In this document: piece by piece, positions 17,368 through 57,685 of the stretch
How the letters are laid out: every line of letters begins with the position of its first letter
How positions within the stretch are numbered: the stretch's first letter is position 1
Virus record (IMG/VR): IMGVR_UViG_3300020477_000990
Span: 124,001-188,000 of that record
DNA length: 64,000 nt
Reading direction: 5' to 3' (one strand)
Made by a program: the position numbers and the translations under genes
The notes under the pieces: generated by a model
Seen by the model: only the letters and a program-made list of their open reading frames with translations
What the model was told of the DNA's origin: nothing
The model's database searches: none

Positions 17368-17409
17368 TTGACAACATATTACAACTATAATACAATAATA
17401 TGATAAGTA
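17368..17409 (+). promoter_or_regulatory. Dual promoter for rplL: sigma70 plus TAAGTA late-type box
   Basis: TTGACA 17368-17373, 17 nt, TACAAT 17391-17396; TAAGTA 17404-17409. Confidence 0.6.
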
Positions 17410-17440
17410 TGTATTAACCAAGTATATAATGAAAGGCTTT

Positions 17441-17827
17441 ATGACAGAAGAAGCAAATAAAATAGAAGTATTAGTAAAACAGTTAGGGCAACTAACAGTA
17501 GTAGAAGCAGGTCAACTTGCAAAACAATTAGAAAAAGAATGGGACCTAGATTTAGATTCATTAACAGCAGGTGCTGGTGCTCAAGCGGCGGCTCCAGTAG
17601 ATGAAGGCAAAACAGAATTTGATGTATTACTTACAGGCTTTGACGATAGTAAAAAAATTGCAGTACTTAAAGCAATTAAAACAATTAAAGATATAGGCTT
17701 AATGGACGCAAAAAAATTTGTGGAAGGAGATTTACCGGCAACAGTAGCAGACGAAGTTTCAAAAGAACAAGCTGAAAAATTTAAAAAAGAAATTGAAGAT
17801 GCTGGTGGACAGGTACAATTAAAATAA
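17441..17827 (+). CDS. rplL: 50S ribosomal protein bL12 (L7/L12), full length
   Basis: NTD LGQLTVVEAGQLAKQLEKEW, Ala-rich hinge, CTD KTEFDVLL...KKIAVLKAI...GLMDAKKFVE...AEKFKKEIEDAGGQVQLK; SD AAAGG before ATG 17441. Confidence 0.95.
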   Translation: MTEEANKIEVLVKQLGQLTVVEAGQLAKQLEKEWDLDLDSLTAGAGAQAAAPVDEGKTEFDVLLTGFDDSKKIAVLKAIKTIKDIGLMDAKKFVEGDLPATVADEVSKEQAEKFKKEIEDAGGQVQLK

Positions 17828-18138
17828 TGTTTAAAATTTTAGTATTAGCATATCTCATTGGACAAGACCCTATAGCAACGCAACAAACATTTGCTATGGA
17901 AAAAACATTTAGTACAATGGAAGAATGTAAAATAGAATTAATGATGCAAACTCGTGATAACGGAACTTATGATGTGTTATGGGAATTTGTAGAAGACATG
18001 GATTTCAAATATGATTGGTTAGTAGCTGGTTGTAAGAATGAAGAAACCGGAGAGGAGTTTCAAATTAGTCCAGAATATCCGTTAGGTAAACCTGACGAAT
18101 TACAAGATGTGGCAGTTGATAAACAGTTAGAAGTATGA
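17827..18138 (+). CDS. Small secreted-type protein
   Basis: MFKILVLAYLIG signal-like start; FSTMEECKIEL. Confidence 0.7.
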   Translation: MFKILVLAYLIGQDPIATQQTFAMEKTFSTMEECKIELMMQTRDNGTYDVLWEFVEDMDFKYDWLVAGCKNEETGEEFQISPEYPLGKPDELQDVAVDKQLEV

Positions 18139-18639: not shown

Positions 18640-19467
18640 TAAATTATTAGCTTCTGTATAAAGTTGATTACCAAATTCTTTATGCACACTAGGACCCAAA
18701 TGCCAACCATCTCTAGCATTATCATCACGACCTAATTTTTCTTTAACGGCAGAGTGTACAGTTTTTAAATCACGGACTTTTAAACTTATTAGCCTTGTGT
18801 TCTTACAAATAAGATTTACCATATTAAAGTTTTTTATAAAATTTTCTCTAACAGTAATGTTATCAAATCCTGCAGATCGATCTGGTACAATTTTTTTATG
18901 TATAACAGTTCCATCTTCTTGAATAAACTCTCCCCAGTTTAACCAAGCATATAATACGACAACAAGATCAGGTTTAATAGTGTCAATTGATCTATAAAGT
19001 AATCTTGTAATGTAATCATTAGGAACACCAGCTACACCTAAATTAATAAGTTTAGTATTGTTTATTTTTTCTTTATTAAATCTTTGTTTTAAATGATACG
19101 GCCATATTTGTTTGTCATCTAAACCAGTACCAAACGTACTACTTGAACCACAAACTAATATTGTAAAATTTGAAGGAGAATCTATTTCATCTCCTCTATA
19201 ACCTAAACTGTTAAAAGTATAGTTAACATTATCCGATGTATAGTTCCAATCTTTATGAGGTGGGTTTAATTTTAAATTGTTAAAGTTTTTTTCATTGTCT
19301 ATTGAAAACCATTTAGCAGTTGAGTTTCGTTTAACACCTTTAACCCAATCACATTGTAACCCATTAGTTTCATCTATCCATTTAAATGATTTTGCTTCGT
19401 TGATAATATCAGGTACACCTAATGTCCAATATTGATCATTAATATCCGTTGTCGTTAAAGTCGTCAT
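18622..19467 (-). CDS. SGNH/GDSL-like protein
   Basis: VCGSSSTFG, NLGVAGVPND, DGWH. Confidence 0.7.
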   Translation of the reverse strand: MTTLTTTDINDQYWTLGVPDIINEAKSFKWIDETNGLQCDWVKGVKRNSTAKWFSIDNEKNFNNLKLNPPHKDWNYTSDNVNYTFNSLGYRGDEIDSPSNFTILVCGSSSTFGTGLDDKQIWPYHLKQRFNKEKINNTKLINLGVAGVPNDYITRLLYRSIDTIKPDLVVVLYAWLNWGEFIQEDGTVIHKKIVPDRSAGFDNITVRENFIKNFNMVNLICKNTRLISLKVRDLKTVHSAVKEKLGRDDNARDGWHLGPSVHKEFGNQLYTEANNLLFPVK

Positions 19468-19759
19468 ATAGTGTGTACGTGGCAGTTAATTCATCACCTG
19501 CTTTAATTGGTCTAATAGTCATTAAATAACACACAGGTTTTTGATGCCAATATCCTTTTATATTTCTGCAATTTGGATTATCTGAATGATTATAAAATGC
19601 ACCTAAGGCAGTTCTAATCGCACCATGTGGAAAGTTTTTATCTAATATATGAACAATACCTAATACAATATCTTCTTTAAAATCTTTAGTAGCAAATAAT
19701 CCTAATCCTTGCACATTAGATTCTTTGATAGTAATTCCGTCTGGTAGTGGCTTGTACAT
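19439..19759 (-). CDS. SET-domain protein (lysine methyltransferase fold)
   Basis: GLGLFAT...NHSDNPN...IKAGDELTATY. Confidence 0.85.
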   Translation of the reverse strand: MYKPLPDGITIKESNVQGLGLFATKDFKEDIVLGIVHILDKNFPHGAIRTALGAFYNHSDNPNCRNIKGYWHQKPVCYLMTIRPIKAGDELTATYTLYDDFNDNGY

Positions 19760-21013: not shown

Positions 21014-22195
21014 TTAATCCCTTTTGTAATATTTATATTCAGTAATGTCAGCTAGTTCTGGAAACACGTCTTCAAAGTGTTCATTTCGAAATTTATCTAC
21101 ACGTAGCGTCCAGTCAATAAATTTCATCCAATCATGATATCCATAATCATCTTGATTCATATAATCAATAAATGTTTGTATATCTTTATTTTTATGTTCT
21201 AGTAATTTATTAGAAATAGATCTTTTAGCATCGTTAGGTAAACATTTAATATTATAATGCATTGGATAGTGCAAACTATTTAGATATACACTTATACCAA
21301 ATTCTTTAGCCCATGCTAAAAATTCGGGTATGTATAGCACGTTAAAGACGTTGATTGTATGACATATACCAACAGTAAATTTTTTACTTTGTTTATTTTT
21401 AAATTCATTAATAACGTGTAATGCATTTTTCCATTTAGCAGGATGCCTTTGGTATTCAAATTGCTTACCAATACCATCTATAGAAAATTGAATGTCAACA
21501 GACTTAAAGTGGGGCCATATACTTTGCAATGCTTCATTAGGTAATTGTGTTCCATTTGTATTATAATGAATTCCTATGTTTTTAGCATAACCTTGTTCAA
21601 CGCAAAATTGTAATAACTCAAATTGTTCTTTAATTAAAAAAGGTTCTCCTCCAGTAAAGTCGATATATTCTAATGTTGGTAATAATTCTTTAAGCTCACG
21701 CCAAAACTTTTTGTTAGTTTCTGGCCATCCATGCCTAGTGTGTTTTTCTATAGTGTTATCTTCTTTATCATAATGTTGTTGTTCAGCTATCCATTTACTA
21801 GAAGAATGTGTTCCACATATACGACATTTTAAATTACAAATGTTTCCTAGTTTTAAATCAAGATATTTTAACTTAGGTTCCTGTATTATTTCCTTTGTAA
21901 AATGATGTTGATATTTTTTATTATCTCTAATTCTTTTTGAAACTTTACCACTTGCTTCTTCACTCCAGCATTTAGCACACCCACTAGGTTTTTTACCATT
22001 TAGGAATTCTTTTCTTAGGTTTCTATAATAATCACTATTCCAAGCGTCATCAAATGTGTTATTAGATAAATTGAATGGTTGCTTGTTTTTATCAGTCATG
22101 TTATTATTATACATACAGCAAGGTTTAATCCACCCTGCGGCTGTGGACTCTAATGAGATCCATGGTAATATACAAAATGATTTAGGTACGTGCAT
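21014..22195 (-). CDS. Radical SAM protein with N-terminal twitch/SPASM-like Cys cluster
   Basis: CNLKCRIC; FCILPW...PCC...CAKCW; FTGGEP; YNTNG; start 22195 is 5 nt after TAAATA. Confidence 0.9.
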   Translation of the reverse strand: MHVPKSFCILPWISLESTAAGWIKPCCMYNNNMTDKNKQPFNLSNNTFDDAWNSDYYRNLRKEFLNGKKPSGCAKCWSEEASGKVSKRIRDNKKYQHHFTKEIIQEPKLKYLDLKLGNICNLKCRICGTHSSSKWIAEQQHYDKEDNTIEKHTRHGWPETNKKFWRELKELLPTLEYIDFTGGEPFLIKEQFELLQFCVEQGYAKNIGIHYNTNGTQLPNEALQSIWPHFKSVDIQFSIDGIGKQFEYQRHPAKWKNALHVINEFKNKQSKKFTVGICHTINVFNVLYIPEFLAWAKEFGISVYLNSLHYPMHYNIKCLPNDAKRSISNKLLEHKNKDIQTFIDYMNQDDYGYHDWMKFIDWTLRVDKFRNEHFEDVFPELADITEYKYYKRD

Positions 22196-22227
22196 AACTA
22201 TATTTAACATAGCACAAAAAGGATAAA

Positions 22228-22629
22228 ATGTCTATAGAAGAAAAATATAAGAGCTATCAAGAACAATTAGAAGTACTTACTGAAAATATGGACAAATATC
22301 AGTACCTAATTAACATTGGGTCAAAAAATTCGATGCCAGAAGAATATAAATTAGACTCATTTAAAGTACATGGCTGTATGAGTCAAGTATGGCTAGTACC
22401 AAAATATAATGAAGGTAAAATAACTTTTATGGCTGACTCTGATGCACATATTACTAGAGGAGTAGTTACTATGGTAGCAGATATTTTTAGTGGGTCAACA
22501 GCAAAACAAATACAAGAAACAAATATTGATACTATAATTAATGGACTAGGTTTATTAAGTATTTTATCGCCCAATCGACGTAATGGTGCTTATAATATGT
22601 TTCATAAGGTAAAAGATTATGCCAACTAA
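22228..22629 (+). CDS. sufE: SufE family Fe-S sulfur-transfer protein
   Basis: KVHGCMSQVWL, ADSDAHITRG, LSPNRRNG. Confidence 0.9.
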   Translation: MSIEEKYKSYQEQLEVLTENMDKYQYLINIGSKNSMPEEYKLDSFKVHGCMSQVWLVPKYNEGKITFMADSDAHITRGVVTMVADIFSGSTAKQIQETNIDTIINGLGLLSILSPNRRNGAYNMFHKVKDYAN

Positions 22630-23434
22630 AATAGCTTGTATTGGTTGCAGTTGGACTGAAGGTATTGCAGTAGATGGTCAACTTATGGACCACCAAGATA
22701 CATATCCATATCTATTATCTAAATACTTAAGAGAAAATGCAAAAAATAATGTTATGTATAATGCTGGAAGGTCGGCGGCAGGAACAGAGTATTATCATTT
22801 AGTTACTGATTATCTAATTAAAAAATTTAATCCAGATATCTTTGTTATACAATTTACAACACATGATCGTGGAATATTACCGTTAGATCCAATTGATGAA
22901 AACGAGAAAAGATTAAATTTTGGTTATGATACTATTGATAACACTTATTGTAAAATTTGGGATAACAATAAAAGTATAATGCATTTAAGTCCTGGAATGG
23001 GTGCAAGTGCCAGTAAGCATAGTTCAGAAACACAATGGGATGGTTTAATAGATAAAATTTATAACGAACGAATAAAAGGAAAAATGGCTCCAGAAGTTGA
23101 ATTAGATACATTAAAAAAATATATTGCGTTGTGGTGGGAGCAATCAAAAAATTCAGATATACAAAAATATTTTTATTATTCTCATATGTATAGTTTGCTT
23201 GATTATTTAGAAGAATTAGGAAAGCAAGTAATTCCTTTTCATTGGATGAGATATAAACCAGAATTTAGAACTAAACTTTTTGAATTGAGACCATATCCAT
23301 CTATAGAAGGATTTTTAGGTAATAAACGTTTTAAAGATTTAACTCACGATAACGGATTTCATTTTGGTGTAGAAGGACACACTACGATAGTTCAGGAACT
23401 TTTAGGTCCTGCAATTCAGGAAATAATTCAATAG
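22619..23434 (+). CDS. SGNH/GDSL-like protein
   Basis: CIGCSWTEG, NAGRSAAG, DNGFH. Confidence 0.7.
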   Translation: MPTKIACIGCSWTEGIAVDGQLMDHQDTYPYLLSKYLRENAKNNVMYNAGRSAAGTEYYHLVTDYLIKKFNPDIFVIQFTTHDRGILPLDPIDENEKRLNFGYDTIDNTYCKIWDNNKSIMHLSPGMGASASKHSSETQWDGLIDKIYNERIKGKMAPEVELDTLKKYIALWWEQSKNSDIQKYFYYSHMYSLLDYLEELGKQVIPFHWMRYKPEFRTKLFELRPYPSIEGFLGNKRFKDLTHDNGFHFGVEGHTTIVQELLGPAIQEIIQ

Positions 23435-24611
23435 CATTTTCATTACGTAATTTATCAACCATATTAGTTCTTTCCCAAAACTTTGGAATAAGATGTGATG
23501 AATCTTTTTCATACATAAAGTGAATTAATTTATCATAACGTTTTTCTTTATTGTGTGTATACTTGTCAAACCATTCTTGTTCTTGAACGTATCTTTCTTC
23601 TAAACGTTTTTTCATTTCCATTGGAAGTATTTGTATAGAAAGTTCTTCTGGTACAAACAACGGATTAATCAAACTGCCACCAACAGCGTCAACCCAACCT
23701 TTTTGTATCCATTCATGATGAAAGTCTGGTACATGGAAACTATTATATACATTTAAACAAGTTGCAAGGAACACATATACATCTGGACAAATATCAAACA
23801 TACGTTTTCTATTTTCTTCAACTTGTTCCCATGATTGTCCTTTACGTAAGTATTCTCCACGTTTACCCATGCCATCTAACGAAGCACCTATTTTAACAGA
23901 TTCAAAACGATTCCATATTTCCATAACGTCTAATTTTTTAAATACCATTTGTGAAAAGTTTGTGTTGTACTTTAATCTTACGTGATACATTTTACGTTCA
24001 TCAAGTTTTTTTAGAATTCTATAATGCTCTTCCATAATTAATGGTTCACCACCTGCAAAGTATATTTCTTCTAAGCCGTCCATATATGGTTCAACTTTTT
24101 TCCAAAATGTTTCTTCGTCTTTATAAGGTCTTATAATTTTAGGCTGATCCAATGGGCCATATAATTTTACATTATCTTCATACCAACTTGATGATAAGTC
24201 TGGTCCACAAGTTCTACATTTAAAATTACACAAATTTGAAAATCTAAAATCAATATAAGGTAAGTTAATTTTATCAACTGTACCATCTTCTTTAGTGGTA
24301 CCAATCTTATCAAAATGATTTTCAAATGCTTCGTTGGCCCAAGTTCTTGTTGTATTCAATCCACTTGACTCCATGGAATAACAACGAGTACATTCTTTTG
24401 TTGGTTTATCTTTTAACATTGCTACACGCATTTTCTTTAACTTATCTGAATTCCAAATTTCTTCAAATGATTGATCTTTTAAGTTACCAAGTATCTCATT
24501 CATAGGAGCCATACAACAAGGTAACACTCTACCATCTGGCCATGAGTGTAAATGTGTCCAAGGTAACATACAAAATCGTTTTGATTTTTTTAATGCGTAA
24601 TCTTTATCCAT
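23382..24611 (-). CDS. Radical SAM protein with N-terminal twitch/SPASM-like Cys cluster
   Basis: CNFKCRTC; FCMLPW...PCC...CTRC; FAGGEP. Confidence 0.9.
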   Translation of the reverse strand: MDKDYALKKSKRFCMLPWTHLHSWPDGRVLPCCMAPMNEILGNLKDQSFEEIWNSDKLKKMRVAMLKDKPTKECTRCYSMESSGLNTTRTWANEAFENHFDKIGTTKEDGTVDKINLPYIDFRFSNLCNFKCRTCGPDLSSSWYEDNVKLYGPLDQPKIIRPYKDEETFWKKVEPYMDGLEEIYFAGGEPLIMEEHYRILKKLDERKMYHVRLKYNTNFSQMVFKKLDVMEIWNRFESVKIGASLDGMGKRGEYLRKGQSWEQVEENRKRMFDICPDVYVFLATCLNVYNSFHVPDFHHEWIQKGWVDAVGGSLINPLFVPEELSIQILPMEMKKRLEERYVQEQEWFDKYTHNKEKRYDKLIHFMYEKDSSHLIPKFWERTNMVDKLRNENAIELFPELQDLKVPELS

Positions 24612-33869: not shown

Positions 33870-34343
33870 ATGGCTTATAATACACCAGTTAATTACAGAA
33901 CTAATGACGTAACGGCATCCGGAACGATCTCTCCTTCTAGTAGTGGAGCCGAGTCAAGTAGCAACTATGTTACTGAAAGAATTTATAAAGGCTTTAGTTC
34001 TAATAATCCAAATGCTGTAAACAATATGCTTTATGATGCAGATTTAATTAAACAAGATATATATAACCATTTTATGACAGCTAAAGGTGAAAGAGTGATG
34101 CTACCTAACTTTGGTAGCATTATTTGGGATTACTTGTATGACCCACTTGACAGCCAAACAAAAAGTATAGTTGAAGAAGATGCTAGAAGTATTGTTGCCG
34201 CTGACCCTAGAGTAGAATTATTAAATATAGAGGTTGTTGGTTTTGAACAAGGAATAGTAGTTAATATTAGATTAAACATTTTACCTCAAAACATGGTTGA
34301 AGATATGGCCATTACATTTAACAACAATGGGAGTGCAATATAA
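33870..34343 (+). CDS. Baseplate wedge subunit, T4 gp25/GPW-like
   Basis: YKGFSS...DLIKQDIYNHFMTAKGERVMLPNFGSIIWDYLYDP...DPRV. Confidence 0.9.
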   Translation: MAYNTPVNYRTNDVTASGTISPSSSGAESSSNYVTERIYKGFSSNNPNAVNNMLYDADLIKQDIYNHFMTAKGERVMLPNFGSIIWDYLYDPLDSQTKSIVEEDARSIVAADPRVELLNIEVVGFEQGIVVNIRLNILPQNMVEDMAITFNNNGSAI

Positions 34344-37300
34344 TGGGACAACTAGTTAGACAAAGTAATTTATTTTCCGCAGAAGATTGGAAAGTAGTTT
34401 ATCGTAGTTTTAAAGATGCTGATTTTAAATCATATGACTTTGATACTATTCGAGCATCAATGTTAAATTATATTAGTAGAAACTATCCAGAGAATTTTAA
34501 TGACTATATTAATTCATCTGAATTTATAGCTATACTTGATTTGTTAGCTTTCTTAGGTCAAAGTTTATCATTTAGAATTGATATTAATGCTAGAGAGAAT
34601 TTTATTGATACAGCAACAAGAAGAGATTCAATTTTAAAACTAGCAAATATGTTAAGCTACAAACCAAAAAGAAATGTTCCGGCACGTGGCTTATTAAAAT
34701 TATCAGTAATTAAAACAAGTGAACCAATTACTGATTCATTAGGAAATAATTTAAGTAATACTGAAATTAAATGGAATGATCCAAACAATGCTAATTGGTA
34801 TGAACAATTTATTGCTGTATTAAATTCTTCGTTTATTACAACAAATAAATTTGGAAAACCAACACAGTCAGCAAAGATTAGTTCTATAACAAATGACTTA
34901 TATACTTTTAATAATACTAAAGCAATTTCAGTAACACAACCATTTAATAGTAAAGTAAACAATAAATCATATTCATTTGATGTTGTACCAGCAACATTTA
35001 ATACAGCAGGTTATATCGAAGAACAAACACCTGATCCATTAAATGCTTATAATTTAATTTATAAAAATGATGGAAAAGGATTTGATAGTGCCAATACTGG
35101 ATTTTTTGTTTATTTTAAAGAAGGTTCGCTATCATATAAAGATTTTAATTTTGATTCTCCGGTTGAAGATAGAGTGCAATCAATTGAAGTTAATGACATT
35201 AATAATTTAGATGTTTGGGTACAAGAAATTAACTCATCTGGGTTAACAGAAAAAACATGGTCAAAAGTTCCAACGTTATCAGGACAAAATATAATTTATA
35301 ATAGTTTAGCATTAGGAACTAGAACAATATACGAAGTACAATCAAAAGTTAATGATCAAGTTGATATTAAATTTTCAGATGGACAATTTGGTAATATTCC
35401 AGTTGGCTTATATAGAATTTGGTATAGAACTAGTGCAACCAAAGGAGAAGAAATTTCTCCATCAGATATTAAAGGAAAAGGTGTTTCGTTTAGTTATGTA
35501 AACCAAGAAGGCCAAACTTATGATTTAACAGTTCAATTTAATCTTGAATATAATGTTTCGAATTCATTTTCAAGAGAAACAATTGATGAAGTTAAAATAA
35601 ATGCAGGATCAAGTTACTATACACAAGATAGAATGATTAATGCAGAAGACTATAATGTATTTCCAATTACAAAAGTTTCTGGAATACAAAAGTTAAAAGC
35701 ATTAAACAAAACACACGCAGGGCATTCAAGATTTATTGACATTCAAGATCCGACAGGTACAGTTGCAAATGTTAATTGCGTTGGTGAAGATGGAATTTTA
35801 TATAAAGAACCAAATAATACTGAAAAGGTTTTATCAGTAATTGATACAAGTTCATATGATAGTATGGTATTAGAAGTTGAAAAATTAATTCAATCTATTC
35901 AAACACAAAACTTTTATTTTGATCCATATAAAAAAGCAATCGAGGCAATACCTATTAGTGGATATCCTTCTAAATTTGTTTTCTTATCAGCAGGTGATGA
36001 CATTGTATATTGGAGACCAATGCCAGTTGCAACATCAGGATATTATGGATATATTACACAATCGGCTCCAGCTGAAAGCGAATCTACTGCAAAAAATAAT
36101 ACAAACTTAAAGAAAGTTTGGAAAGCACCAACAACAGATAAGCATGGACTAATACGTCCAGGTTCAAGAATTGAATTTATTGATGACTATAATAATCCAA
36201 CAAAAACAATTTGGGCAACAGTTAAAGGTGTTACAGCAAATGGTGATCCTGCTAATTTAACAAATGGACCAATTCAATTAAGTGAATCAATCCCAGCTGG
36301 TTATAGAGCTAGAGCTATTATTCCAAATATAAGAACAACATTTACAACTACTGAAAGAACAGCAATTAGATCTAAATTAAGTGAGTCAACTGCAATTTTA
36401 AGCAAATTTGGTCTTGGGTATAGTTATTATAATTCTGCAACAAAAGAAGAGAGTTGGTATATTATTGATGCAAATAAAGTTGATGTATCAAGTGAGTTTA
36501 ATGTAGTTAACAATACAATTGGTGGCGGATCACAAGGAACAAATAACGATTCAAGTTGGTTAGTAAAAGCAGAGTTTACAGAAAAAGGTGCAAACACAAA
36601 TGCTAAATTTACATTTACATCAAGAGGATTAGATTATATATTTCAATCAACCAATGATGTTAGATTCTTTTATGTTAAAGATTATAAAACATTAGATAGT
36701 GCAACAGGTTTAACTATTCAAGATAAAATCGATATTTTAGCTGATGTAAACAGTAAAATTGAAGAAGGTACTGGAGCATCTGTTTTAGCAACAATTGATG
36801 TATCATTAACAGCACATCAGGCAACTACAGTTGGCAAAGATGAAATTGTAACTCAAGCTAATTCAGGAGCAAAAGGAAAAGTTAAAACGGCAGTAGCAGG
36901 TGGACAAACAATTGAGTTAACAGGAGTTTCCGGAACGTTTACAACTAACGTAGCTGATACATTAACAGGATCAGCAACAGGGGCGTTAAGTGCCTATGTA
37001 ACAAACGTAACAGGAGGTGCAGTTACAGGATTTACTAATACATCAGGAGATACATTATCGTATACTACTCCAGTTGGATTAAATTATACTACAGCACCTA
37101 AAATTTCAATGTCAGGAGGACTTGGTAGCGGAGCATCTGCAATTGCAACAGTTCATAAAGGTTTAGTAATAGCAATGCCTATTATTGATGGTGGATCAGC
37201 ATACAAGTTTCCACCAACGGTTACAATAACACCAGAGTCAATTGGTGCTAAATTAGATGAAACTATTTCTTTATCAGTAGTTGAGAATGCTTCAGAACAA

Positions 37301-38293
37301 GATGGTTATGTCGACGATAGAAAAGTAAAAGTTTCAACTTATGATTCAGATGAAGATGGTATGCCAGATCTTCCTTTAGCTATTGACAAGTTAGTTCAAG
37401 ACACATCTAATTCTAAAAATTTTATATTCTTTGAAAACTATACTGACTTTGATAACTATGTTTATTATAAATTAACAACATCAGTAACTCAACGTTCAGC
37501 ATTAACTAATAGTGGTATTGAATTTTTAACAACTACTAATAAATTTTATAGCGGTGGTGTATTACAAACAACAACAGGCTCTGAAGGAGCATACCAGGCA
37601 ACAATAGGAACTACAACTTATAAAGCATTTATTGGTAGATCATATTATACACCAGCAGGAATAAGTGATCCAATGTTTTTCCATTGGAAACATACTGCAC
37701 CTAGAGACCAAAGAATTGATCCAAGTATTAGCAATATTATCGAATTGATAGTATTAACTTCAACGTATTACGATAATGTTTTAAGTTGGACAGCTAATGA
37801 AAAATCAGTTAGTGAGTTTCCAGAAGAACCAACAGTAGAAGAATTGAATGAAATGTTTTCTTCTAATTTAAATTCATATAAAGCAATTGGAGATCAAATA
37901 ATTTATACTCCTGCGAAATTTAAATTATTGTTTGGTTCAACAGCGTCAGCAAATTTACAAGGTACATTTAAAATTGTAAAATCAGTAGGATCTACAATGA
38001 CAGATAATGAAATTAAATCAAGAACAATAACTGCCATTGATACATTTTTTGATATTACAAATTGGAATTATGGTGAAAGTTTTTATTATACAGAATTATG
38101 TGCATATATCCACAGCCAACTAGCTACACAAATAAGTTCAGTTGTTATTGTTGGTTCTGATGCAGAATCCAAGTTTGGAGATTTATTTGAGATTGTTTCT
38201 GATTCAAACGAGTTATTTTATTCAACAGCAACAGTTGACAATGTTGAAATCGTAAATGCATATACAGATCAAAATTTAAAAAAGGGGTCGTAG
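34343..38293 (+). CDS. Baseplate wedge protein, T4 gp6-like, with inserted repeats
   Basis: DFKSYDFDTIRASM...SSEFIAILDLLAF...ENFIDTATRRDSILKLA; QDRMINAEDY. Confidence 0.85.
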   Translation: MGQLVRQSNLFSAEDWKVVYRSFKDADFKSYDFDTIRASMLNYISRNYPENFNDYINSSEFIAILDLLAFLGQSLSFRIDINARENFIDTATRRDSILKLANMLSYKPKRNVPARGLLKLSVIKTSEPITDSLGNNLSNTEIKWNDPNNANWYEQFIAVLNSSFITTNKFGKPTQSAKISSITNDLYTFNNTKAISVTQPFNSKVNNKSYSFDVVPATFNTAGYIEEQTPDPLNAYNLIYKNDGKGFDSANTGFFVYFKEGSLSYKDFNFDSPVEDRVQSIEVNDINNLDVWVQEINSSGLTEKTWSKVPTLSGQNIIYNSLALGTRTIYEVQSKVNDQVDIKFSDGQFGNIPVGLYRIWYRTSATKGEEISPSDIKGKGVSFSYVNQEGQTYDLTVQFNLEYNVSNSFSRETIDEVKINAGSSYYTQDRMINAEDYNVFPITKVSGIQKLKALNKTHAGHSRFIDIQDPTGTVANVNCVGEDGILYKEPNNTEKVLSVIDTSSYDSMVLEVEKLIQSIQTQNFYFDPYKKAIEAIPISGYPSKFVFLSAGDDIVYWRPMPVATSGYYGYITQSAPAESESTAKNNTNLKKVWKAPTTDKHGLIRPGSRIEFIDDYNNPTKTIWATVKGVTANGDPANLTNGPIQLSESIPAGYRARAIIPNIRTTFTTTERTAIRSKLSESTAILSKFGLGYSYYNSATKEESWYIIDANKVDVSSEFNVVNNTIGGGSQGTNNDSSWLVKAEFTEKGANTNAKFTFTSRGLDYIFQSTNDVRFFYVKDYKTLDSATGLTIQDKIDILADVNSKIEEGTGASVLATIDVSLTAHQATTVGKDEIVTQANSGAKGKVKTAVAGGQTIELTGVSGTFTTNVADTLTGSATGALSAYVTNVTGGAVTGFTNTSGDTLSYTTPVGLNYTTAPKISMSGGLGSGASAIATVHKGLVIAMPIIDGGSAYKFPPTVTITPESIGAKLDETISLSVVENASEQDGYVDDRKVKVSTYDSDEDGMPDLPLAIDKLVQDTSNSKNFIFFENYTDFDNYVYYKLTTSVTQRSALTNSGIEFLTTTNKFYSGGVLQTTTGSEGAYQATIGTTTYKAFIGRSYYTPAGISDPMFFHWKHTAPRDQRIDPSISNIIELIVLTSTYYDNVLSWTANEKSVSEFPEEPTVEELNEMFSSNLNSYKAIGDQIIYTPAKFKLLFGSTASANLQGTFKIVKSVGSTMTDNEIKSRTITAIDTFFDITNWNYGESFYYTELCAYIHSQLATQISSVVIVGSDAESKFGDLFEIVSDSNELFYSTATVDNVEIVNAYTDQNLKKGS

Positions 38294-38296
38294 GCA

Positions 38297-41200
38297 ATGG
38301 CTGAGCAATTTGTTGCATCAAAACAATTACCAGTAGTTTTACAATCAACAAAGTTAAAAAACTTTTTTGATTCTACAGTTGACCAATGGTTTAAAAATGA
38401 AGACAATGAATTCACTCATGGATTTGTTGGAAGACGTGAAGGTAGAATTTTTGAACCAAAAAAAGATGCCTACTTAGGTGAACCGTCAGTTGATAGATTT
38501 AATTATCAACTTGAACCTTCGGTTGTAGTTAGAGATAATACTACACAAGGAATTTCATATCAAACTACATACGATGACTTTGTTAATAAATTAAGATTTG
38601 ATGGCGGCCAAATTCTAAATCATAAAAAATTATTTGAAGAAGATTATTATTCTTTTGCTCCACCTATTGACATTGATAAATTTTTAAACTATGCTAATTA
38701 TTATTGGTATCCAACTAAAGATGATTTGTCAACAGAAACAAGTGGAGTATTTCCAAGTTTACCAGCAATTGTAGTTGACGGGTCTGGTGCTACACCTATT
38801 GATCCAGCAACAGATATTATTGGAAAGCAAACATATACAGCACCAGATGCCACGGTGTTTACAAATGGTTTACAAATAAAATTTGGTCAATCAGTTACTA
38901 ATGATGCATATAAATTTAGACATACAATTACTGCAATAAATTTAAATGGCGGTGGATCTCAGTATGCAGTAAATGATAAAATTATAGTTTCAACTGTTAC
39001 TATTGGACACGTTACAAGTATTAATGCAGGGGGAACAATCACAGGAGTAGAATTAACAAATCCAGTTCTTGGTGATGGTGTTACTCCAACAGCGGTAACA
39101 ATCACAACTGCAAGTGGTAATGGTGCATTATTAACTGTTACTACATCACAAACTGATATTACTTACATAATTGAAGGTGTAGGAACAGAAATTAAATTAA
39201 TTGATATAAAAGATTTAAGGAACTTAAATGGACTAACAACTTCGTCAAAAGATTATCTAACAATGCAACGAGGTTGTAAAGATGGTAACATTTGGTCAAA
39301 AACAAACGGATGGGTACATAAAAATACATTAGACAACTATCCTAGTGTAACAACTACAACAGAAGAACAACACCTATGGGATACAGAAGGATGGGCAGGT
39401 CTTCAAACTTGGGATAGTATAACAGTATCGTCTACAACTGCATTTACAAAAACAACCGGTAGAAGAGCTACAAGACCAATTATTGAATTTAATAGTAATA
39501 TGGAATTATACGATTATGGAAAAAATCATATACTTGATGTTACAGTTATTGAAGATACATTAACAAAAACACAAATAGAATCTTATGCTAATATAACTAT
39601 TGATGGTAGGCAAATTCAAAATAGAGATACTATATTATTTCCAAGTGCGGCCAGCCAAGATGATTATGTAGCTTGGGATGGAAACTTGTGGGATCATGAT
39701 ACTGACTCAGATATATCAACAGGTGGCGGTGGACAAACTGGTGGTGATTTAGGTTGGGACGTATCTAGTTCAGCTTTTACAATTGAAGGATCTATTTGGC
39801 AAGTATCTGGTGTAGGAACAGCTCTAACACTTACACAGGTTATTACTAGTGTAAATGAAAATGATAAAGTTTATATTGATAAAGGTACAAAATATGGTAG
39901 TACTGAATGGTACTATGATGGATACAATTGGAATCAAGCACAATTAAAATCTAAAGTAAATATTGCACCATTGTTTAATTTATTTGATAATAATAAAGTT
40001 ATATTAAATGATACAGGAATATATCCATCGTCAACGTTTACAGGTTCAAAAGTATTTGGCTATAAAGTTGGTTCAGGAACCAACGATGCTGAATTAGGAT
40101 TTCCACTATCATATGTGTCTGGTAGTGGTCAAAGTGATATTGAGTTTTGTAACTATCTTAATGTCGATTCATACACATATAATACCTCAACTGCGATATC
40201 AGGATACAAGTTTTATAAGCAATTCTTGTATCCTGAAACTATTGCTAAAACTACAAACTATGAAGTAAATATAAATCCTAGTCAAAGAAATACAGCAAAC
40301 AATGTATTTTATATAAATGGTGAAGAAAGCCCAATATTGATTTTACAAAGAGGAGACACATATAATTTTAAATTTAGTTCTCCAGAAAGTGGAAGTACAG
40401 GTTACACAGGAGTAAATCATCCATTTTATATTTCAACAGGAACTCCTTGGTCATCGGGAACATATACTGGTGAATATACAACTGGTGTAACAGGATCTAG
40501 AGCATACTATGGTGGTGCTTATAGTACATTAGAATTTATAGTTCCGTCAAATGCTCCAGATACATTGTACTATCATTCTGCTACAAGTAATAATCCTGTT
40601 AAATTAGTTATAGTTGATAATCCTATTACTAAAATTAATGAAGCTACAGAAACATTTTATAGAAATGAATGGAACAAAAATTTAGGAAGTAAAAAATTAA
40701 AACAACGTTTAGTTCAAGAACATACAGTTTCAAATACAAATTTAACTACTAAACCAACACTAGAAGTTATACCAACATCTATTATAGATATGGAAGTATA
40801 TAAAAATGGAATTAGACAAAAGTTTGGTACAGATTATACTACAACTGCAAGTGTTATAATTAACTTTACAACTGCATTAGTTGAAAATGATTTTATTAAA
40901 ATTTATTACGAGACAAATGATAATACTCCAATTCGTCAAGTAAACTATTTTGAAATACCAAAGAACCTTGAATCAAATGCTTCAAATGAAGAAGTTGTTT
41001 CAGGAACATATTCAGAATTTTTCCAACACTTTGAATCTATAGTTCAAAACCAAATTGGGTTTACTGGTGATGTAAGTGGAGCAAATAATTATCGCGATAC
41101 TGAAAAAGATTTAGGAAAAGGTAAAGTTATTTTACAACATGATGGTTCACTAATGAAAGTAATGGCATTTGCTAATAATGATGACCTGGATATTATATCA

Positions 41201-44200
41201 TCAATAAGATATGTAAAAAATAGATATCAAGAGTTTCAATTAAAATTTTTAAATGCTGTAAATAAAATTCAAGTATCACAAGATGCTTCTTTGTTAACAA
41301 CTTCACAAATTGTTGATAAAGCAATTAAAAATATTACTATAGATAAAATTGCAACTGATCCATTTACATATTCATTTATGATGGCTAGTGGTGATAGATA
41401 TACTTCAGAATCTCATACTATTACAACAACTAATTATACTTGGGGAAATACAAACACATTCTTACAAAGTAGTGATACACAAGAAGTATTTAATCAAGAG
41501 CCTGGCTTAACAATTGCATCAGCATATGATCCAAAAAATGATTATGATAGTAAAGCATTATACGTTTATAAAAATAATGTATTAATGACATATAATCATG
41601 ATTATATTGTAAGTTATTCTTCATCTGGAACAAAAATTATCTTTATAGGATATGCGGCAAATAAACCAAAAGTTAATGATGTAATTTCAATTAGATATTA
41701 TACAACAATTCAACCAACTTGGATACCACCTACTCCAGCAAAACTAGGAGCGGCAAAAGTTTACCAACCGGTTGAAATATCTGATACTATAACATATTCA
41801 AGTGGAACTAGAAACTTTATACAATGTCATGATGGGTCATTTGTTTTAAAATATAATGATTTAAGAGATACTGCATTATTAGAATTAGAAAAAAGAATTT
41901 ATAACACAATCAATAGAAGATTTACTTCTAGGGATTATGTTCCATTATTAGAAATTAATCAAAAACAACCAAACTATTTTAATTCAACTAGTTGGTCTAG
42001 AAATGATATTATTAATTTAATGCGTCCAATATTTACAAGATGGGCATCAGAAAATGCATTAAACTATCATGAGAATACTGGTTATAATAATGTTCTAACA
42101 TTAACAGGAGTTTCTGGTACATTTAAAGTTGGAGAATCTGTTTCTGGTGCAAGTTCTAAAGCAAAAGGTGTAATTACAAAAATTGCAAGTAATGTAATAA
42201 CTATAAACCAAGTTATTGATAGTTTCCAACTTAATGAAAAAATAACTGGTGCAACAAGTGGTGCAGAAGGTACAACAGATCCAAATGGTGGTATTACTAT
42301 TGATTGGAAAGTAATGAATTACTCTTCATTAAAAGATCCAAATGGAAATAGTTTACCAGGACACTGGCGTGGTATGTATCGTTGGTTCTATGGAACAGAT
42401 AGACCACATACTCATCCATGGGAAATGTTAGGCTTTGCACAAAAACCAATTTGGTGGGATAATTATTATTCTTGGACGGCATCGTCGACAAGAGCAAAAT
42501 TAATAAGTGATGTTGAACAAGGTATTATTAGATCAGGCTTACGTGAAAACTATACTGATAAATCATATCTTAACGCAAATAATGTTTATAAAAAACCAAA
42601 CTTTGCGTCATATGTTCCGGTTGATAATACTGGAAAACTATTAAGTCCAAAAGAAATAGGAATTATTTCAGATAATCCTACAGAATATAATTCACAACTT
42701 GATTGGAAATTTGGAGATGGTGCTCCAGTTGAAAATGCATTTGTTGTTTCTCCGGTATATCAATATGCAATACAAAAAATATTATATTTGACAGCACCAG
42801 GTTTATATGTTGACTTGCTTTGGAATTCAAATGATATATTAAAATCATCAGCTGATGCAACTCAAATTATTGACTCTGTAAGTGGTAAAAGACCTAACAA
42901 TAAAAACTATTATGTCCATAGAGAAGTAGATGCTAATAGTATAACATATAACAGAGCTGGAGTACAAAACTTTTTAGTTGAGTATTTAAATTATGTAGGT
43001 AAGTCAGTTACAGATTCATTTGGTAATGTAATTAGAAACCTACAAACAAATTTATCATATCGTTGTGCAGGGTTTATAGACTCATCAACACTTAAAATTG
43101 AATCACAAGCATATGACTCAGTAAGTAATTCAACTAGCATTGTAATTCCAACAGAAGATATTAATATATCATTACATACAGGTGGAAGCATTGATGAAGT
43201 ATCATATAGTGGTTTTATTGTTCAGGTAGTTGAGCAAGGATATAAGATTTTTGGATACGATATAGTACATCCATACTTTAATGTACTTAGACCAATGATT
43301 TCAGGTAGATCAAAAAAACTTAGAATTGGTGGAAAAGAAGTTTCTCCAGTTTCTTATAAACCTGGAACAACGTATCATACAGATGAAATTGTTAAACATG
43401 AAGACAAATATTATCAAAGCATCACTACTCAAGTAACATTAACAACTGATACTAATCCAGATTTACAAAAATGGAAAGTGCTTAAAGTTTTACCAACAGT
43501 AGGTGGAACAGAAGTAGACCACTATTATGATTTTGATGAATCTAATGTATATCAAATTGATTATGGAACTGTATATAAAACTAGACAACAAGTTTATGAT
43601 GCAATAGTAGGATATGGAAAATATTTAGAATTAGTTGGATGGGACTTTAGTGAGTTTAATGTTGATATTGGAGAAAATAAAAATTGGGATTATAGTGCCA
43701 AAGAATTTTTATTTTGGAGTTTAGGAAAATGGGAAAAAGGAAATTATGTTACATTAAGTCCTAGTGCTGATAAATTAAAATTTATACCAGCTTCAGGTGT
43801 TGTCCAAAGTATTAAAGATATTAATAATGGTGTATATAGTGCATTAAACAAAGAAGGTTTTGGACTAGATTCAAAACAACTAGATGTTATACGTGATGAT
43901 GACATGGTAACAATATCACAAAAAGATGGAATTGGAATTTATGGATTAAGATTATCAGTTAAAGAAACTGAGCATATGATTACATTAGAAAACAAAACTA
44001 TCTTTAATGATACAATTTATAATACAATATTAGCACAAAGACAGCCACGTGTAAAAATTAATACAACTAGAACATTAGGATGGCATGGTAAACTTGAAGC
44101 AGATGGTTATATTATAAGTGGAACGTCATTGCTTAATAACTTTGAAAAATCAGTAACTGATTCTGGAAAATATTATGATATAGAATCTTCTCTTGTAGCT

Positions 44201-56650: not shown

Positions 56651-57685
56651 ATGGAAATAGATACAAGTACAAAAGTTGATGATAAATCTAAGATAAAAAT
56701 ATCTGATATTGATATATTTTACCTATCATATGATGAGCCTAATAAACAAGAGCATTGGGCAGATATCAAAAGTAAAGTTCCATGGGCTAAATGGGTAGAT
56801 GGCGTTGAAGGATCAGATGCGGCACACAAAGCCTGTGCTAATAGAAGTGATACTACTAGGTTTATTACTGTAGATGGCGATAATAAGTTAGTTAATTATG
56901 AAAAATTAATTGATTTAGAACTTGACTTTTCTGATTATGAAAATTTAAATTTAGAAGAGTCTGTAGTATCTTTTACAGGTTATAATAACATTAACGGATT
57001 AATGTATGGTAATGGTGGTATTAAGTGCTGGCCAAAACAAGCAGTTCTTGATATGAAAACACACGAAGCGGCTGAGTCAGAAGGATCAGCTGTAGACTTC
57101 TGTTGGGATATGAATTATATACAATTAAACGAATGCTTTTCGCACGTATATAATAACGCAACACCGCATCAAGCCTGGCGTGCCGGATTTAGAGAAGGTG
57201 TAAAAATGTCTTTAGACAGAGGATTTAAAGTTGATTCAGTTAACTTTGAAAAAAATATCCATGACAAAAATTATCATAGACTTTTAATTTGGGCGTCTGT
57301 AGGACGAAATGTTGATAATGGTTTATGGGCAATATACGGAACAAGACTTGGTTGCTATATGACAAATTGTACTGATTGGGATTTTGTTAATGTAAGAGAT
57401 TTTGAATGGCTTAATAAATTTTGGAAAGAAGAAGTTAAACCACAATTTACAGGTAATGACCAAATGTGTCATTACGAAAAGTATCAATGGGATAAAGAAA
57501 AACTTTTAAAAGAGTCTCTTAGACTTGGTAAAGAATTAAGAAGCAAACTTGGATTACAATTAGGTGATTTAGGACCAGATGATTCAGCATTCTTTAAAAA
57601 AGTATATTGGAATCCGCCTCGCTCTGGAGCATTTGTAACAGAAAAAGGACAAGACGGAATTACTCGTTATAAAGTATTGAAATGA
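56651..57685 (+). CDS. GT-A fold glycosyltransferase-like protein
   Basis: DIFYLSYDEP...AHKACA...FITVDGDN (DxD)...YGNGGIKCW...AWRAGFREG. Confidence 0.65.
   Translation: MEIDTSTKVDDKSKIKISDIDIFYLSYDEPNKQEHWADIKSKVPWAKWVDGVEGSDAAHKACANRSDTTRFITVDGDNKLVNYEKLIDLELDFSDYENLNLEESVVSFTGYNNINGLMYGNGGIKCWPKQAVLDMKTHEAAESEGSAVDFCWDMNYIQLNECFSHVYNNATPHQAWRAGFREGVKMSLDRGFKVDSVNFEKNIHDKNYHRLLIWASVGRNVDNGLWAIYGTRLGCYMTNCTDWDFVNVRDFEWLNKFWKEEVKPQFTGNDQMCHYEKYQWDKEKLLKESLRLGKELRSKLGLQLGDLGPDDSAFFKKVYWNPPRSGAFVTEKGQDGITRYKVLK

What the first reader, a model, noticed from the sequence alone, without database searches (positions are those of the whole stretch)
17368..17827. Full-length phage bL12 with an altered factor-binding surface and dual promoters
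Phage bL12 genes are known, but this one keeps the L10-binding NTD and hinge, so it could join the stalk. The conserved KAVR...GLKEAK is KAIK...GLMDAK (E. coli R73 to K, K81 to M, E82 to D), on the surface that recruits IF2/EF-Tu/EF-G. Inference: tunes GTPase recruitment, perhaps favouring leaderless mRNA, or evades host L12 modification.
Basis: partly seen in the sequence, partly recalled or inferred. Interest (0 to 1): 0.62.

Follow-up and report, generated by a model that had tools for sequence, protein, structure and literature searches.

The report
Jumbo-phage copy of ribosomal protein bL12
A 328-kb marine phage carries a complete, selectively maintained gene for the ribosomal stalk protein bL12; its factor-recruiting face differs from cellular bL12 in a pattern shared with other ocean phages, so this is a detailed new example of a known phenomenon rather than a new kind of system.

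Summary
The gene is real. Window 17441..17827 (+) encodes a full-length bL12 with NTD, hinge and CTD; the ORF can also be read from 17429, but relatives lack that ATG. It passes the equivalog model TIGR00855.

The window belongs to a circular 328,149-bp marine jumbo myovirus. That genome also encodes EF-G, IF3, bS21, 15 tRNAs and an alphaproteobacterial-type tmRNA.

The gene lies in conserved synteny in a clade of related marine phage contigs, and pairwise dN/dS is 0.13-0.47.

R73K and K81M are invariant in that clade and rare in cellular bL12. E82D is not part of the pattern: half the clade keeps E, and 10-20% of cellular sequences have D.

The real signature is wider: I69L, R73K, T76K/M, L78I, K81M, L86F, a one-residue insertion, A90L, loss of K95 and A115G. 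Much of it recurs in other marine phage bL12 lineages, including T4-like, probably SAR11-infecting, phages. One cellular bL12 in a normal rplJ-rplL-rpoB operon also has M81/D82.

There is one conserved sigma70-like promoter, not two. The gene has a Shine-Dalgarno-like leader, so it is not leaderless. No cellular donor was found (51% identity or less). Ribosome incorporation is inferred, not shown. Phage bL12 is already in the literature.

The parts
17368..17396 (+). sigma70-like promoter: TTGACA (17368-17373), 17-nt spacer, TACAAT (17391-17396)
   Evidence: 11 of 12 match. The same -35/17 nt/-10 arrangement is kept upstream of the orthologue in three diverged subclades. The strict motif occurs 22 times on the + strand and 0 times on the - strand of the genome, 19 of them intergenic.
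17432..17436 (+). Shine-Dalgarno-like AAAGG, 5-9 nt before ATG 17441
   Evidence: Invariant in all nine aligned upstream regions.
17441..17827 (+). bL12 coding sequence from the probable start (128 aa plus stop). The ORF is also open from ATG 17429 (132 aa).
   Evidence: The start was chosen by comparison with relatives.
17459..17542 (+). N-terminal dimerisation / uL10-binding domain (two helices)
   Evidence: PF16320 33.5 bits. AF2 helices 3-17 and 20-34 of the 128-aa protein. Core positions E. coli 8, 11, 12, 13, 15, 16, 19, 21, 23, 24 and 27 match the cellular consensus.
17543..17617 (+). Flexible hinge. It begins with an acidic D-L-D-L-D stretch where cells have G-V-S-A-A-A, followed by an Ala/Gly-rich run.
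   Evidence: AF2 pLDDT below 50 and no secondary structure for residues 35-57. Position table.
17618..17824 (+). C-terminal factor-binding domain (beta-alpha-alpha-beta-alpha-beta)
   Evidence: PF00542 77.3 bits. AF2 pLDDT 70-76 with the expected order of elements.
17654..17725 (+). Helix 4 - loop - helix 5 face (E. coli K65..E88) with the clade-specific residues. Codons: K for R73 at 17678-17680, M for K81 at 17702-17704, D for E82 at 17705-17707. Also I69L, T76K, L78I, L86F.
17747..17749 (+). Codon at the position of E. coli K95, the uL11 loop-62 contact; here Ala. No member of the clade has Lys.
   Evidence: Role of K95 from PMC3505967.
17827..18138 (+). 103-aa ORF whose ATG overlaps the bL12 stop (TAATG). 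It follows bL12 in every relative. Function unknown.
   Evidence: No Pfam family. Virus-only clusters in the ESM Atlas. dN/dS 0.06-0.23.

Best explanation
This is a functional, vertically inherited phage gene for a complete bL12 stalk protein. It belongs to a lineage of bL12 genes that circulates among low-GC marine phages.

Most likely mechanism (inferred):
- The host RNA polymerase transcribes it from a sigma70-type promoter.
- It is translated from an SD-led mRNA together with a small conserved downstream ORF.
- The protein dimerises through its conserved NTD and exchanges onto uL10 of the host's ribosomes. The host is probably alphaproteobacterial, possibly SAR11-like.
- There it supplies or remodels the arm that recruits IF2, EF-Tu, EF-G and RF3. 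It would act as one part of a phage translation kit (EF-G, IF3, bS21, 15 tRNAs, tmRNA) that keeps or biases protein synthesis during infection.
- The derived CTD residues (K73, M81, F86, L90, G115, no K95) are held by selection, so they probably change how the CTD docks on factors and on uL11. The direction of the effect is unknown.

Shown: gene identity, domain completeness, conservation, purifying selection, phage context, the signature and its distribution.
Inferred: expression timing, ribosome incorporation, any effect on factors.
For: Identity and completeness.

Phage origin:
- The window is G000:C1:124001-188000 of a 328,149-bp virus record.
- The baseplate wedge protein scores 1134 bits to phrog_10646 and is 38-43% identical to SCTP-2, Atu_ph07 and PA5oct.
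- There is no rplJ or rpoB next to the gene, and no uL10 gene anywhere in the genome.

Conservation:
- 22 protein clusters of 64-99% identity from marine metagenomes.
- Identical synteny: bL12, the 103-aa ORF, SET, radical SAM/SPASM, SufE.
- The clade is monophyletic with a long stem.
- dN/dS is 0.13-0.47.

Signature. It is shared with other phage-context bL12 groups. Pelagimyophages are reported to carry L12 (PMC7029224).

Translation kit in the same genome: EF-G 1074 bits, IF3 161 bits, bS21 63 bits; tRNAs and alpha_tmRNA at 131.6 bits.

Precedent for incorporation: a phage bL12-domain protein was found by mass spectrometry in E. coli 70S ribosomes (PMC6375957).

Promoter and SD.

Presence in the ocean: DNA in runs of 12 studies, and fragments in two metatranscriptome libraries. 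That is weak evidence, because DNA carry-over is not excluded.
Against: - No direct evidence of expression timing, dimerisation, uL10 binding or ribosome incorporation.
- The host is unknown, so compatibility with its uL10 cannot be judged.
- K95, reported as needed for the uL11-bL12 contact in E. coli (PMC3505967), is missing. This could mean weaker docking at the GTPase centre rather than a tuned one.
- Part of the signature (R to K, L to I, L to F, T to K, D to K/N) runs in the direction of AT mutational pressure in a 32% GC genome.
- A cellular bL12 with M81/D82 exists, so M81 alone need not change function.
- In Mizuno et al., tagged phage bL12 could not be affinity-purified with ribosomes.
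Confidence: 0.6

Rival explanations
1. Plain dosage or maintenance gene. The phage bL12 simply tops up stalk occupancy when host r-protein synthesis stops. The unusual residues are tolerated drift, partly compositional from AT pressure, without any change in factor selectivity.
For: - K81 is among the more variable positions in cells.
- E82D is common in cells.
- A cellular bL12 in a canonical operon has M81/D82.
- Several changes go towards AT-rich codons, in a genome of 31.8% GC.
- The strictly conserved K65, K70, G79, L80, A83, K84, P91 and K100 are all kept.
Against: - The signature residues are invariant across a clade whose synonymous divergence is near 1.
- They recur in other phage lineages.
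- Low-GC alphaproteobacterial bL12 (loci of 33-36% GC) keep R73, T76, L78, K81 and L86, so composition alone does not force the changes.
Confidence: 0.25
2. Matched pair. The altered bL12 face co-evolved with the phage's own EF-G, so that remodelled stalks prefer the phage factor.
For: The same genome encodes a full-length EF-G. bL12 CTD is known to contact the G' subdomain of EF-G (established knowledge; Diaconu 2005, cited). Mizuno et al. proposed virus-specific factor interfaces.
Against: - The phage EF-G shows no clade-specific change at any of the 34 conserved G' positions, against 41 changes elsewhere.
- The same bL12 signature occurs on T4-like and other phage contigs where no EF-G is seen in the stretches read.
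- Close EF-G relatives are far fewer than close bL12 relatives.
Confidence: 0.08
3. Off-ribosome role or evasion. The protein acts as a free decoy that titrates factors. Alternatively, M81 removes a lysine that the host modifies (K81 is methylated in E. coli, from my own knowledge) or that a defence system targets.
For: The changed residues include two or three lysines (K81, K92, K95). Metagenomic proteins with 3-8 tandem bL12 CTDs exist, which shows that CTDs are used outside the normal stalk architecture.
Against: The NTD core and hinge are conserved under selection, which a free CTD decoy would not need. CTD-only phage proteins already exist for such roles. No modification enzyme or defence that targets bL12 is known for the presumed hosts.
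Confidence: 0.06
4. Not a phage gene: cellular DNA mis-assembled or mis-binned into a viral contig.
For: Such errors have been alleged for another phage reported with many ribosomal protein genes (comment PMC13623518, listed).
Against: - The gene sits among phage genes on a single circular contig.
- The same neighbourhood recurs on many independent contigs from different samples and studies.
- No cellular bL12 is more than 51% identical.
- There is no rplJ or rpoB context.
Confidence: 0.01

Closest known systems
Cellular bL12 (RplL; e.g. E. coli 1RQU/1CTF, T. maritima 1DD3, D. radiodurans 2ZJQ)
   Same: Same three-part architecture and length. Passes TIGR00855. Keeps K65, K70, G79, L80, A83, K84, P91, K100, G114 and the NTD hydrophobic core.
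   Different: 51% identity or less to any cellular sequence found. Not in an rplJ-rplL-rpoB operon. Differs at I69L, R73K, T76K/M, L78I, K81M, L86F, +1 residue after G89, A90L, K95 lost, A115G. The hinge starts with an acidic stretch.
bL12-domain proteins of cultivated N4-like and other podophages (Mizuno et al. 2019, PMC6375957)
   Same: Phage-encoded Ribosomal_L12 CTD. One of them was detected in E. coli 70S ribosomes.
   Different: Those are mostly a CTD alone or a CTD embedded in larger proteins of up to 724 aa, about 30-40% identical to cellular bL12, in genomes under 80 kb. This one has the uL10-binding NTD and hinge and sits in a 328-kb genome.
L12 homologue of pelagimyophage group PMP-A (Zaragoza-Solas et al. 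2020, PMC7029224), and the T4-like marine contigs that carry the P0330/P0196 cluster
   Same: Full-length marine phage bL12 with K73, M81, F86, L90 and G115. Low-GC genomes with radical SAM and Fe-S genes nearby.
   Different: Only 41-46% identical to the window's protein. T4-like genome type of about 150-170 kb. No one-residue insertion. Linking the P0330 group to PMP-A is my inference from its T4-like context, not a direct match.
Huge-phage translation gene sets (Al-Shayeb et al. 2020, PMC7162821)
   Same: That paper reports rpL7/L12, rpS21, IF3, EF-G, tRNAs and tmRNA in phages over 200 kb. The proposed role, interception or maintenance of host translation, is the same.
   Different: Those phages are mostly from other habitats and clades. 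The two full-length huge-phage hits in the phage collection are only 26% identical (LR756501/LR756503). The residue signature was not described there, as far as I could read.

Membership tests
bL12 (Ribosomal_L12 / TIGR00855) | C-terminal alpha/beta factor-binding domain | tested here: met
   PF00542 77.3 bits against cut-off 25.9, covering the full profile 1-67. AF2 model shows beta-alpha-alpha-beta-alpha-beta at pLDDT 70-76.
bL12 (Ribosomal_L12 / TIGR00855) | N-terminal dimerisation / uL10-binding helical hairpin | tested here: met
   PF16320 33.5 bits against cut-off 25. Two helices in the model. Core residues conserved.
bL12 (Ribosomal_L12 / TIGR00855) | Flexible Ala/Gly-rich hinge between the domains | tested here: met
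   About 23 residues without predicted structure, pLDDT below 50. The Ala/Gly run is visible in the sequence. Its first part is atypically acidic.
bL12 (Ribosomal_L12 / TIGR00855) | Whole-protein score above the curated equivalog cut-off | tested here: met
   92.6 bits against 84.4. The margin is narrow, which fits a divergent member.
bL12 (Ribosomal_L12 / TIGR00855) | Conserved factor-face and uL11-contact residues (E. coli K65, K70, R73, L80, K81, E82, K84, K95) | tested here: inconclusive
   K65, K70, L80 and K84 are kept. E82 is D here and E in half the clade. R73 is K, K81 is M, K95 is absent. Which of these are truly required is taken from the literature, not tested.
bL12 (Ribosomal_L12 / TIGR00855) | Encoded in the rplKAJL-rpoBC operon as the cell's own stalk protein | tested here: not met
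   Phage neighbours only. No uL10 gene in the 328-kb genome. It is a homologue in a virus, not the cellular orthologue.
bL12 (Ribosomal_L12 / TIGR00855) | Binds uL10 helix alpha-8 and sits on the 50S stalk | not testable with these tools
   The host is unknown. The one complex prediction gave no verdict and is not evidence either way.
bL12 (Ribosomal_L12 / TIGR00855) | Stimulates GTPase of IF2, EF-Tu, EF-G and RF3 | not testable with these tools
   Needs biochemistry.
Marine-phage bL12 lineage (defined here) | Shared derived residues L69, K73 (most), M or L81, F86, L90, G115, in non-ribosomal, phage-type gene context and low-GC DNA | tested here: met
   - Position table.
- Contexts.
- Grouping with the P0312 group: SH-aLRT 94. 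Grouping with the T4-like group: only 52.
- The 15 IMG/VR contigs were found with a pattern that contains the motif, so they show existence, not frequency.

The most novel reading that the evidence does not exclude
Marine phages, including a probable jumbo phage of SAR11-type alphaproteobacteria, share a virus-specific bL12 allele. Its re-shaped helix 4/5 face and missing uL11-contact lysine would re-programme the stalk, changing which GTPases or stress and hibernation factors are recruited, or how fast. Exchange of a single small protein would then convert host ribosomes into phage-biased ones.
Probability: 0.15. Interest if true: 0.75.

Novelty: new member of a known kind. Interest (0 to 1): 0.42.

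Why it matters
bL12 is the only multi-copy ribosomal protein. It exchanges readily and is the first contact for every translational GTPase, which makes it a cheap handle for a virus to alter translation without building ribosomes.

Here the gene is complete and under selection. It carries a residue signature that recurs in abundant ocean phages: one related cluster is seen on 189 contigs and another on 112. It also sits beside phage EF-G, IF3 and bS21. That gives a concrete, small set of residues to test in vitro: 73, 81, 86, 90, 95 and 115.

If the host is SAR11-like, the finding would also bear on how phages exploit the most abundant and ribosome-poor bacteria in the sea. As it stands, it refines a known phenomenon and does not open a new one.

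Tried and rejected
- Near-identical DNA in the phage collection: none.
- The search for related loci in IMG/VR with the single protein: no relatives. An alignment query later found 15.
- PHROGs: no significant family for bL12.
- Terminator scan: none near the gene.
- Cellular donor: not found.
  - Best of 404 pattern-selected genome hits: 47%.
  - Best of 401 alphaproteobacterial species genomes: 51%. That tally includes one unpublished genome, G045. No sequence from it was used, and only the counts 361/401 rest on it.
  - Exhaustive representative search: only the clade's own cluster below E 1e-30.
- Tried to reach rplL of a named Pelagibacteraceae genome through its EF-G contig. rplL is not within 10 kb and the genome is not held, so SAR11 bL12 was not identified by name.
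- Complex prediction, two copies of the phage NTD with the C-terminal part of uL10 from a low-GC alphaproteobacterial locus (L124): no verdict, score 0.19 against a mark of 0.34. Not evidence for or against binding.
- Co-adaptation of the phage EF-G G' subdomain: no signal.
- A second promoter near 17425..17430 (TATAAT): its -35 region matches 1 of 6, the scan does not report it, and it is absent in the most diverged relatives. Rejected.
- A leaderless mRNA for this gene: rejected, because the -10 ends 44 nt before ATG 17441.
- Metatranscriptome contigs cover parts of the gene and its neighbour. They cannot show a transcript start or exclude DNA carry-over.

Full report
**1. What is at the coordinates**

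- The + strand holds an ORF at 17429..17827 of 132 aa.
- It matches both Pfam bL12 domains: CTD 77.3 bits and NTD 33.5 bits.
- It passes the NCBIfam equivalog model for L7/L12, 92.6 bits against a cut-off of 84.4.
- It aligns over its whole length with solved bL12 chains from D. radiodurans, T. maritima and E. coli.
- An AlphaFold2 model built on 13 relatives shows two N-terminal helices, an unstructured stretch of about 23 residues, and a beta-alpha-alpha-beta-alpha-beta C-terminal domain at pLDDT 70-76.
- 'Full length, with NTD and hinge' is therefore correct.

**2. Start codon, leader and promoter**

I aligned the upstream regions of orthologues from three diverged subclades.
- The 17429 ATG exists only in this strain. 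Relatives read TAATAGAAAGG where the window reads TAATGAAAGG.
- ATG 17441 and an AAAGG 5-9 nt before it are invariant. The protein is therefore probably 128 aa, translated from an SD-led mRNA.
- The -35/-10 pair TTGACA-17 nt-TACAAT (17368..17396; 11 of 12) is kept in all three subclades, as TTGACT-17-TACAAT in the most distant one.
- The TATAAT that overlaps it lies only 12 nt from the -35 and is missing in the distant subclade. There is one credible promoter, not two.
- In the region scan, promoter-like sites at the loose threshold are no commoner than in shuffles: 8 found against 12.7 expected. The case therefore rests on conservation and on the genome-wide picture.
- The strict motif TTGAC[AT]-N16-18-TANAAT occurs 22 times on the + strand and never on the - strand. 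From base composition I reckon about 3 per strand by chance.
- 19 of the 22 are intergenic, although only 11% of the genome is non-coding. 87% of ORFs are on the + strand, so the strand bias alone is weak evidence.
- The -10 ends 44 nt before ATG 17441, so the mRNA is not leaderless.

**3. Whose gene it is**

- The window is positions 124001-188000 of a 328,149-bp IMG/VR virus record. Its ends overlap by 75 bp, so it is a circular assembly, and GC is 31.8%.
- A 1316-aa baseplate wedge protein in the window scores 1134 bits to phrog_10646. It is 38-43% identical to those of the jumbo myoviruses Salicola SCTP-2, Agrobacterium Atu_ph07 and Pseudomonas PA5oct.
- The bL12 neighbours are small ORFs without families, a SET-domain gene, radical SAM/SPASM genes and SufE. 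There is no rplJ or rpoB, and no uL10 gene anywhere in the genome.
- The same genome also encodes:
  - a full-length EF-G (TIGR00484 1074 bits against cut-off 659, with all EF-G domains);
  - IF3 (161 bits);
  - bS21 with a basic N-terminal extension;
  - a class-II aaRS-like protein;
  - 15 tRNAs;
  - a permuted tmRNA of the alphaproteobacterial type (RF01849, 131.6 bits).
- The EF-G is 65-68% identical to many alphaproteobacterial EF-Gs, among them Pelagibacteraceae.
- Together with the low GC, this points to an alphaproteobacterial, possibly SAR11-like, host. That is an inference, not a demonstration.

**4. Conservation and selection**

- The word-indexed search found 22 clusters of 64-99% identity, all from marine or Tara-type sources, and then a drop to 48% or less.
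- Contigs carrying four of them show the same local gene order. A 103-104-aa ORF starts at the bL12 stop.
- In a tree with 98 other sequences the clade is one branch (SH-aLRT 94) on a long stem.
- Pairwise Nei-Gojobori dN/dS among five orthologues is 0.13-0.47, and 0.13-0.17 for the least saturated pairs.
- The locus is present in marine metagenome runs of 12 studies. Short contigs from two metatranscriptome libraries cover 17443-17592 and parts of the neighbouring ORFs. This is only weak support for transcription.

**5. The substitutions**

- E. coli numbering was fixed on 1rqu_A.
- Across the clade, K73 and M81 are invariant, but position 82 is D in 11 and E in 11.
- In 101 non-clade sequences R73K occurs 6 times, K81M never (A 16, others 7), and E82D 15 times.
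- I then took 110 bL12 read from genomes: 80 pattern-selected loci, plus the 30 best of 401 alphaproteobacterial species. The consensus frequencies are:

| Position | Consensus | Frequency |
|---|---|---|
| 69 | I | 0.97 |
| 73 | R | 0.95 |
| 76 | T | 0.89 |
| 78 | L | 0.95 |
| 81 | K | 0.83 |
| 82 | E | 0.90 |
| 86 | L | 0.79 |
| 90 | A | 0.90 |
| 95 | K | 0.75 |
| 115 | A | 0.85 |

- Except at position 82, no member of the phage clade has the cellular residue at any of these positions. The clade also has one extra residue after position 89.
- All 30 alphaproteobacterial sequences keep R73 and E82, and 28 keep K81. This includes three from loci of 33-36% GC.
- K95 is reported to pair with D63 of uL11, and K95A abolishes the uL11-bL12 pull-down (PMC3505967). 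Its absence is therefore as notable as K81M.
- K65, K70, G79, L80, A83, K84, P91, K100 and G114 are unchanged.
- Both genome samples are biased towards sequences resembling the phage's. That bias makes the rarity estimates conservative.

**6. The signature is not private to this clade**

- The exhaustive search of 1.84 billion representatives found only the clade's own cluster below E 1e-30, followed by relatives of 54-59% identity.
- Among the 116 nearest single-domain representatives, M81 occurs in 9 and K73 in 12, often together.
- I looked up the contexts of six M81 bearers:
  - The P0312 cluster (112 contigs) and P0164 lie beside ribonucleotide reductase, PAAR and radical SAM genes.
  - The P0330 cluster (189 contigs, up to 168 kb) lies in a T4-like genome with gp59, NifU and a cell-wall peptidase.
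  - P0190 lies beside a Cpn10-like gene and small ORFs.
  - P0306 has no ribosomal neighbours.
  - Only P0208 sits in a canonical secE-nusG-rplK-rplA-rplJ-rplL-rpoB-rpoC operon.
- In a 167-row tree the jumbo-phage clade groups with the P0312 group, P0164, P0167 and P0023 (SH-aLRT 94). It groups with the T4-like group only weakly (52).
- These groups share L69, M or L81, F86, L90 and G115.
- Fifteen IMG/VR contigs of 32-38% GC carry such genes. They were fished with the motif itself, so they show existence only.
- The literature already notes an L12 homologue in pelagimyophage group PMP-A (PMC7029224), bL12 domains in N4-like phages (PMC6375957), and rpL7/L12 with EF-G, IF3, S21 and tmRNA in huge phages (PMC7162821).

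**7. Mechanism**

- Shown: a complete bL12 gene, kept by selection in a phage lineage, with a conserved host-type promoter and SD, in a genome with other translation genes.
- Inferred: the protein exchanges onto host uL10 and changes or sustains factor recruitment. bL12 is known to exchange, and a phage bL12-domain protein was found in E. coli 70S.
- I tested one specific idea, that the altered face matches the phage's own EF-G. I compared four phage EF-Gs with 110 alphaproteobacterial ones. Of 402 positions conserved at 90% or more, 41 differ in the phage. None of these falls among the 34 conserved positions of the G' subdomain that contacts bL12.
- The signature also occurs in phages where no EF-G was seen. 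That idea is therefore unlikely.
- The 'leaderless' idea has no support for this gene. 59% of 360 ORFs have an SD-like motif at -14 to -10, against 16% background. Three of the 22 promoters do end exactly 6 nt before an ATG, which is worth a separate look.
- A drift-only explanation is weakened by invariance within the clade, by recurrence across phage lineages, and by the canonical residues in low-GC cellular relatives. It is kept alive by the cellular M81/D82 example and by the AT-ward direction of several changes.

**8. Verdict**

- The gene is a new, well-characterised member of a known class (phage-encoded bL12). The added result is that a defined residue signature on the factor and uL11 faces is shared among marine phage lineages.
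- Interest is moderate.

Noticed in passing
G000:C1 about 266007-268076 (locus L099:1480-3549), outside the window: The same phage genome encodes a full-length EF-G (689 aa, TIGR00484 1074 bits), 65-68% identical to alphaproteobacterial EF-Gs. It departs from 110 of them at 41 highly conserved positions, including M49T, W51Y, V85I, T88N, E92N, V118N, Q121L and K124Q in the G domain, and at none in G'.
   Followed up: partly
G000:C1 about 274793-275713 (locus L098:793-1713), outside the window: IF3 (TIGR00168, 161 bits) is followed directly by bS21 with a basic N-terminal extension of about 39 aa, then a NadE-like ORF. Al-Shayeb et al. describe such S21 extensions in huge phages.
   Followed up: partly
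G000:C1 94937-95228 (locus L097:937-1228), outside the window: A permuted, alphaproteobacterial-type tmRNA (RF01849 131.6 bits; ARAGORN tag ADENLALAA), with sigma70-like promoters beside it. There are 15 tRNA genes across the genome, one of them spanning the assembly junction.
   Followed up: partly
G000:C1 27705, 40445, 259034 (and 9748), outside the window: Three of the 22 strict sigma70-like promoters end exactly 6 nt before an ATG, and one ends 9 nt before. That spacing is expected for leaderless mRNAs. Most ORFs nevertheless have SD-like motifs.
   Followed up: no
window 17827-18138: A 103-aa ORF with a hydrophobic N-terminus overlaps the bL12 stop (TAATG). It follows bL12 in every relative, is under strong purifying selection, and belongs to virus-only clusters with no known family.
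   Followed up: partly
locus L093 (Tara contig of 692 bp; protein P0023): A bL12 relative whose NTD is nearly identical to the phage clade's, with R73 and L81, is open only if TAG is read as Gln. This may be a recoded phage or a eukaryote-associated sequence.
   Followed up: no
proteins P0166, P0170, P0185, P0206 and others: Metagenomic proteins of 300-1056 aa contain 3-8 tandem copies of the bL12 C-terminal domain. Their origin and role were not examined.
   Followed up: no
window 38297-50257 and 34343-38293: A single 3986-aa ORF follows the 1316-aa baseplate wedge gene. Many radical SAM/SPASM genes, SufE and a SET-domain gene are scattered through the window (21014-22210, 22228-22629, 23382-24611, 57682-59088, 19439-19759).
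   Followed up: no
locus L156 (GCA_964408405.1 contig, protein P0208): A cellular bL12 in a canonical secE-nusG-rplKAJL-rpoBC operon carries M81 and D82. The organism was not identified.
   Followed up: no
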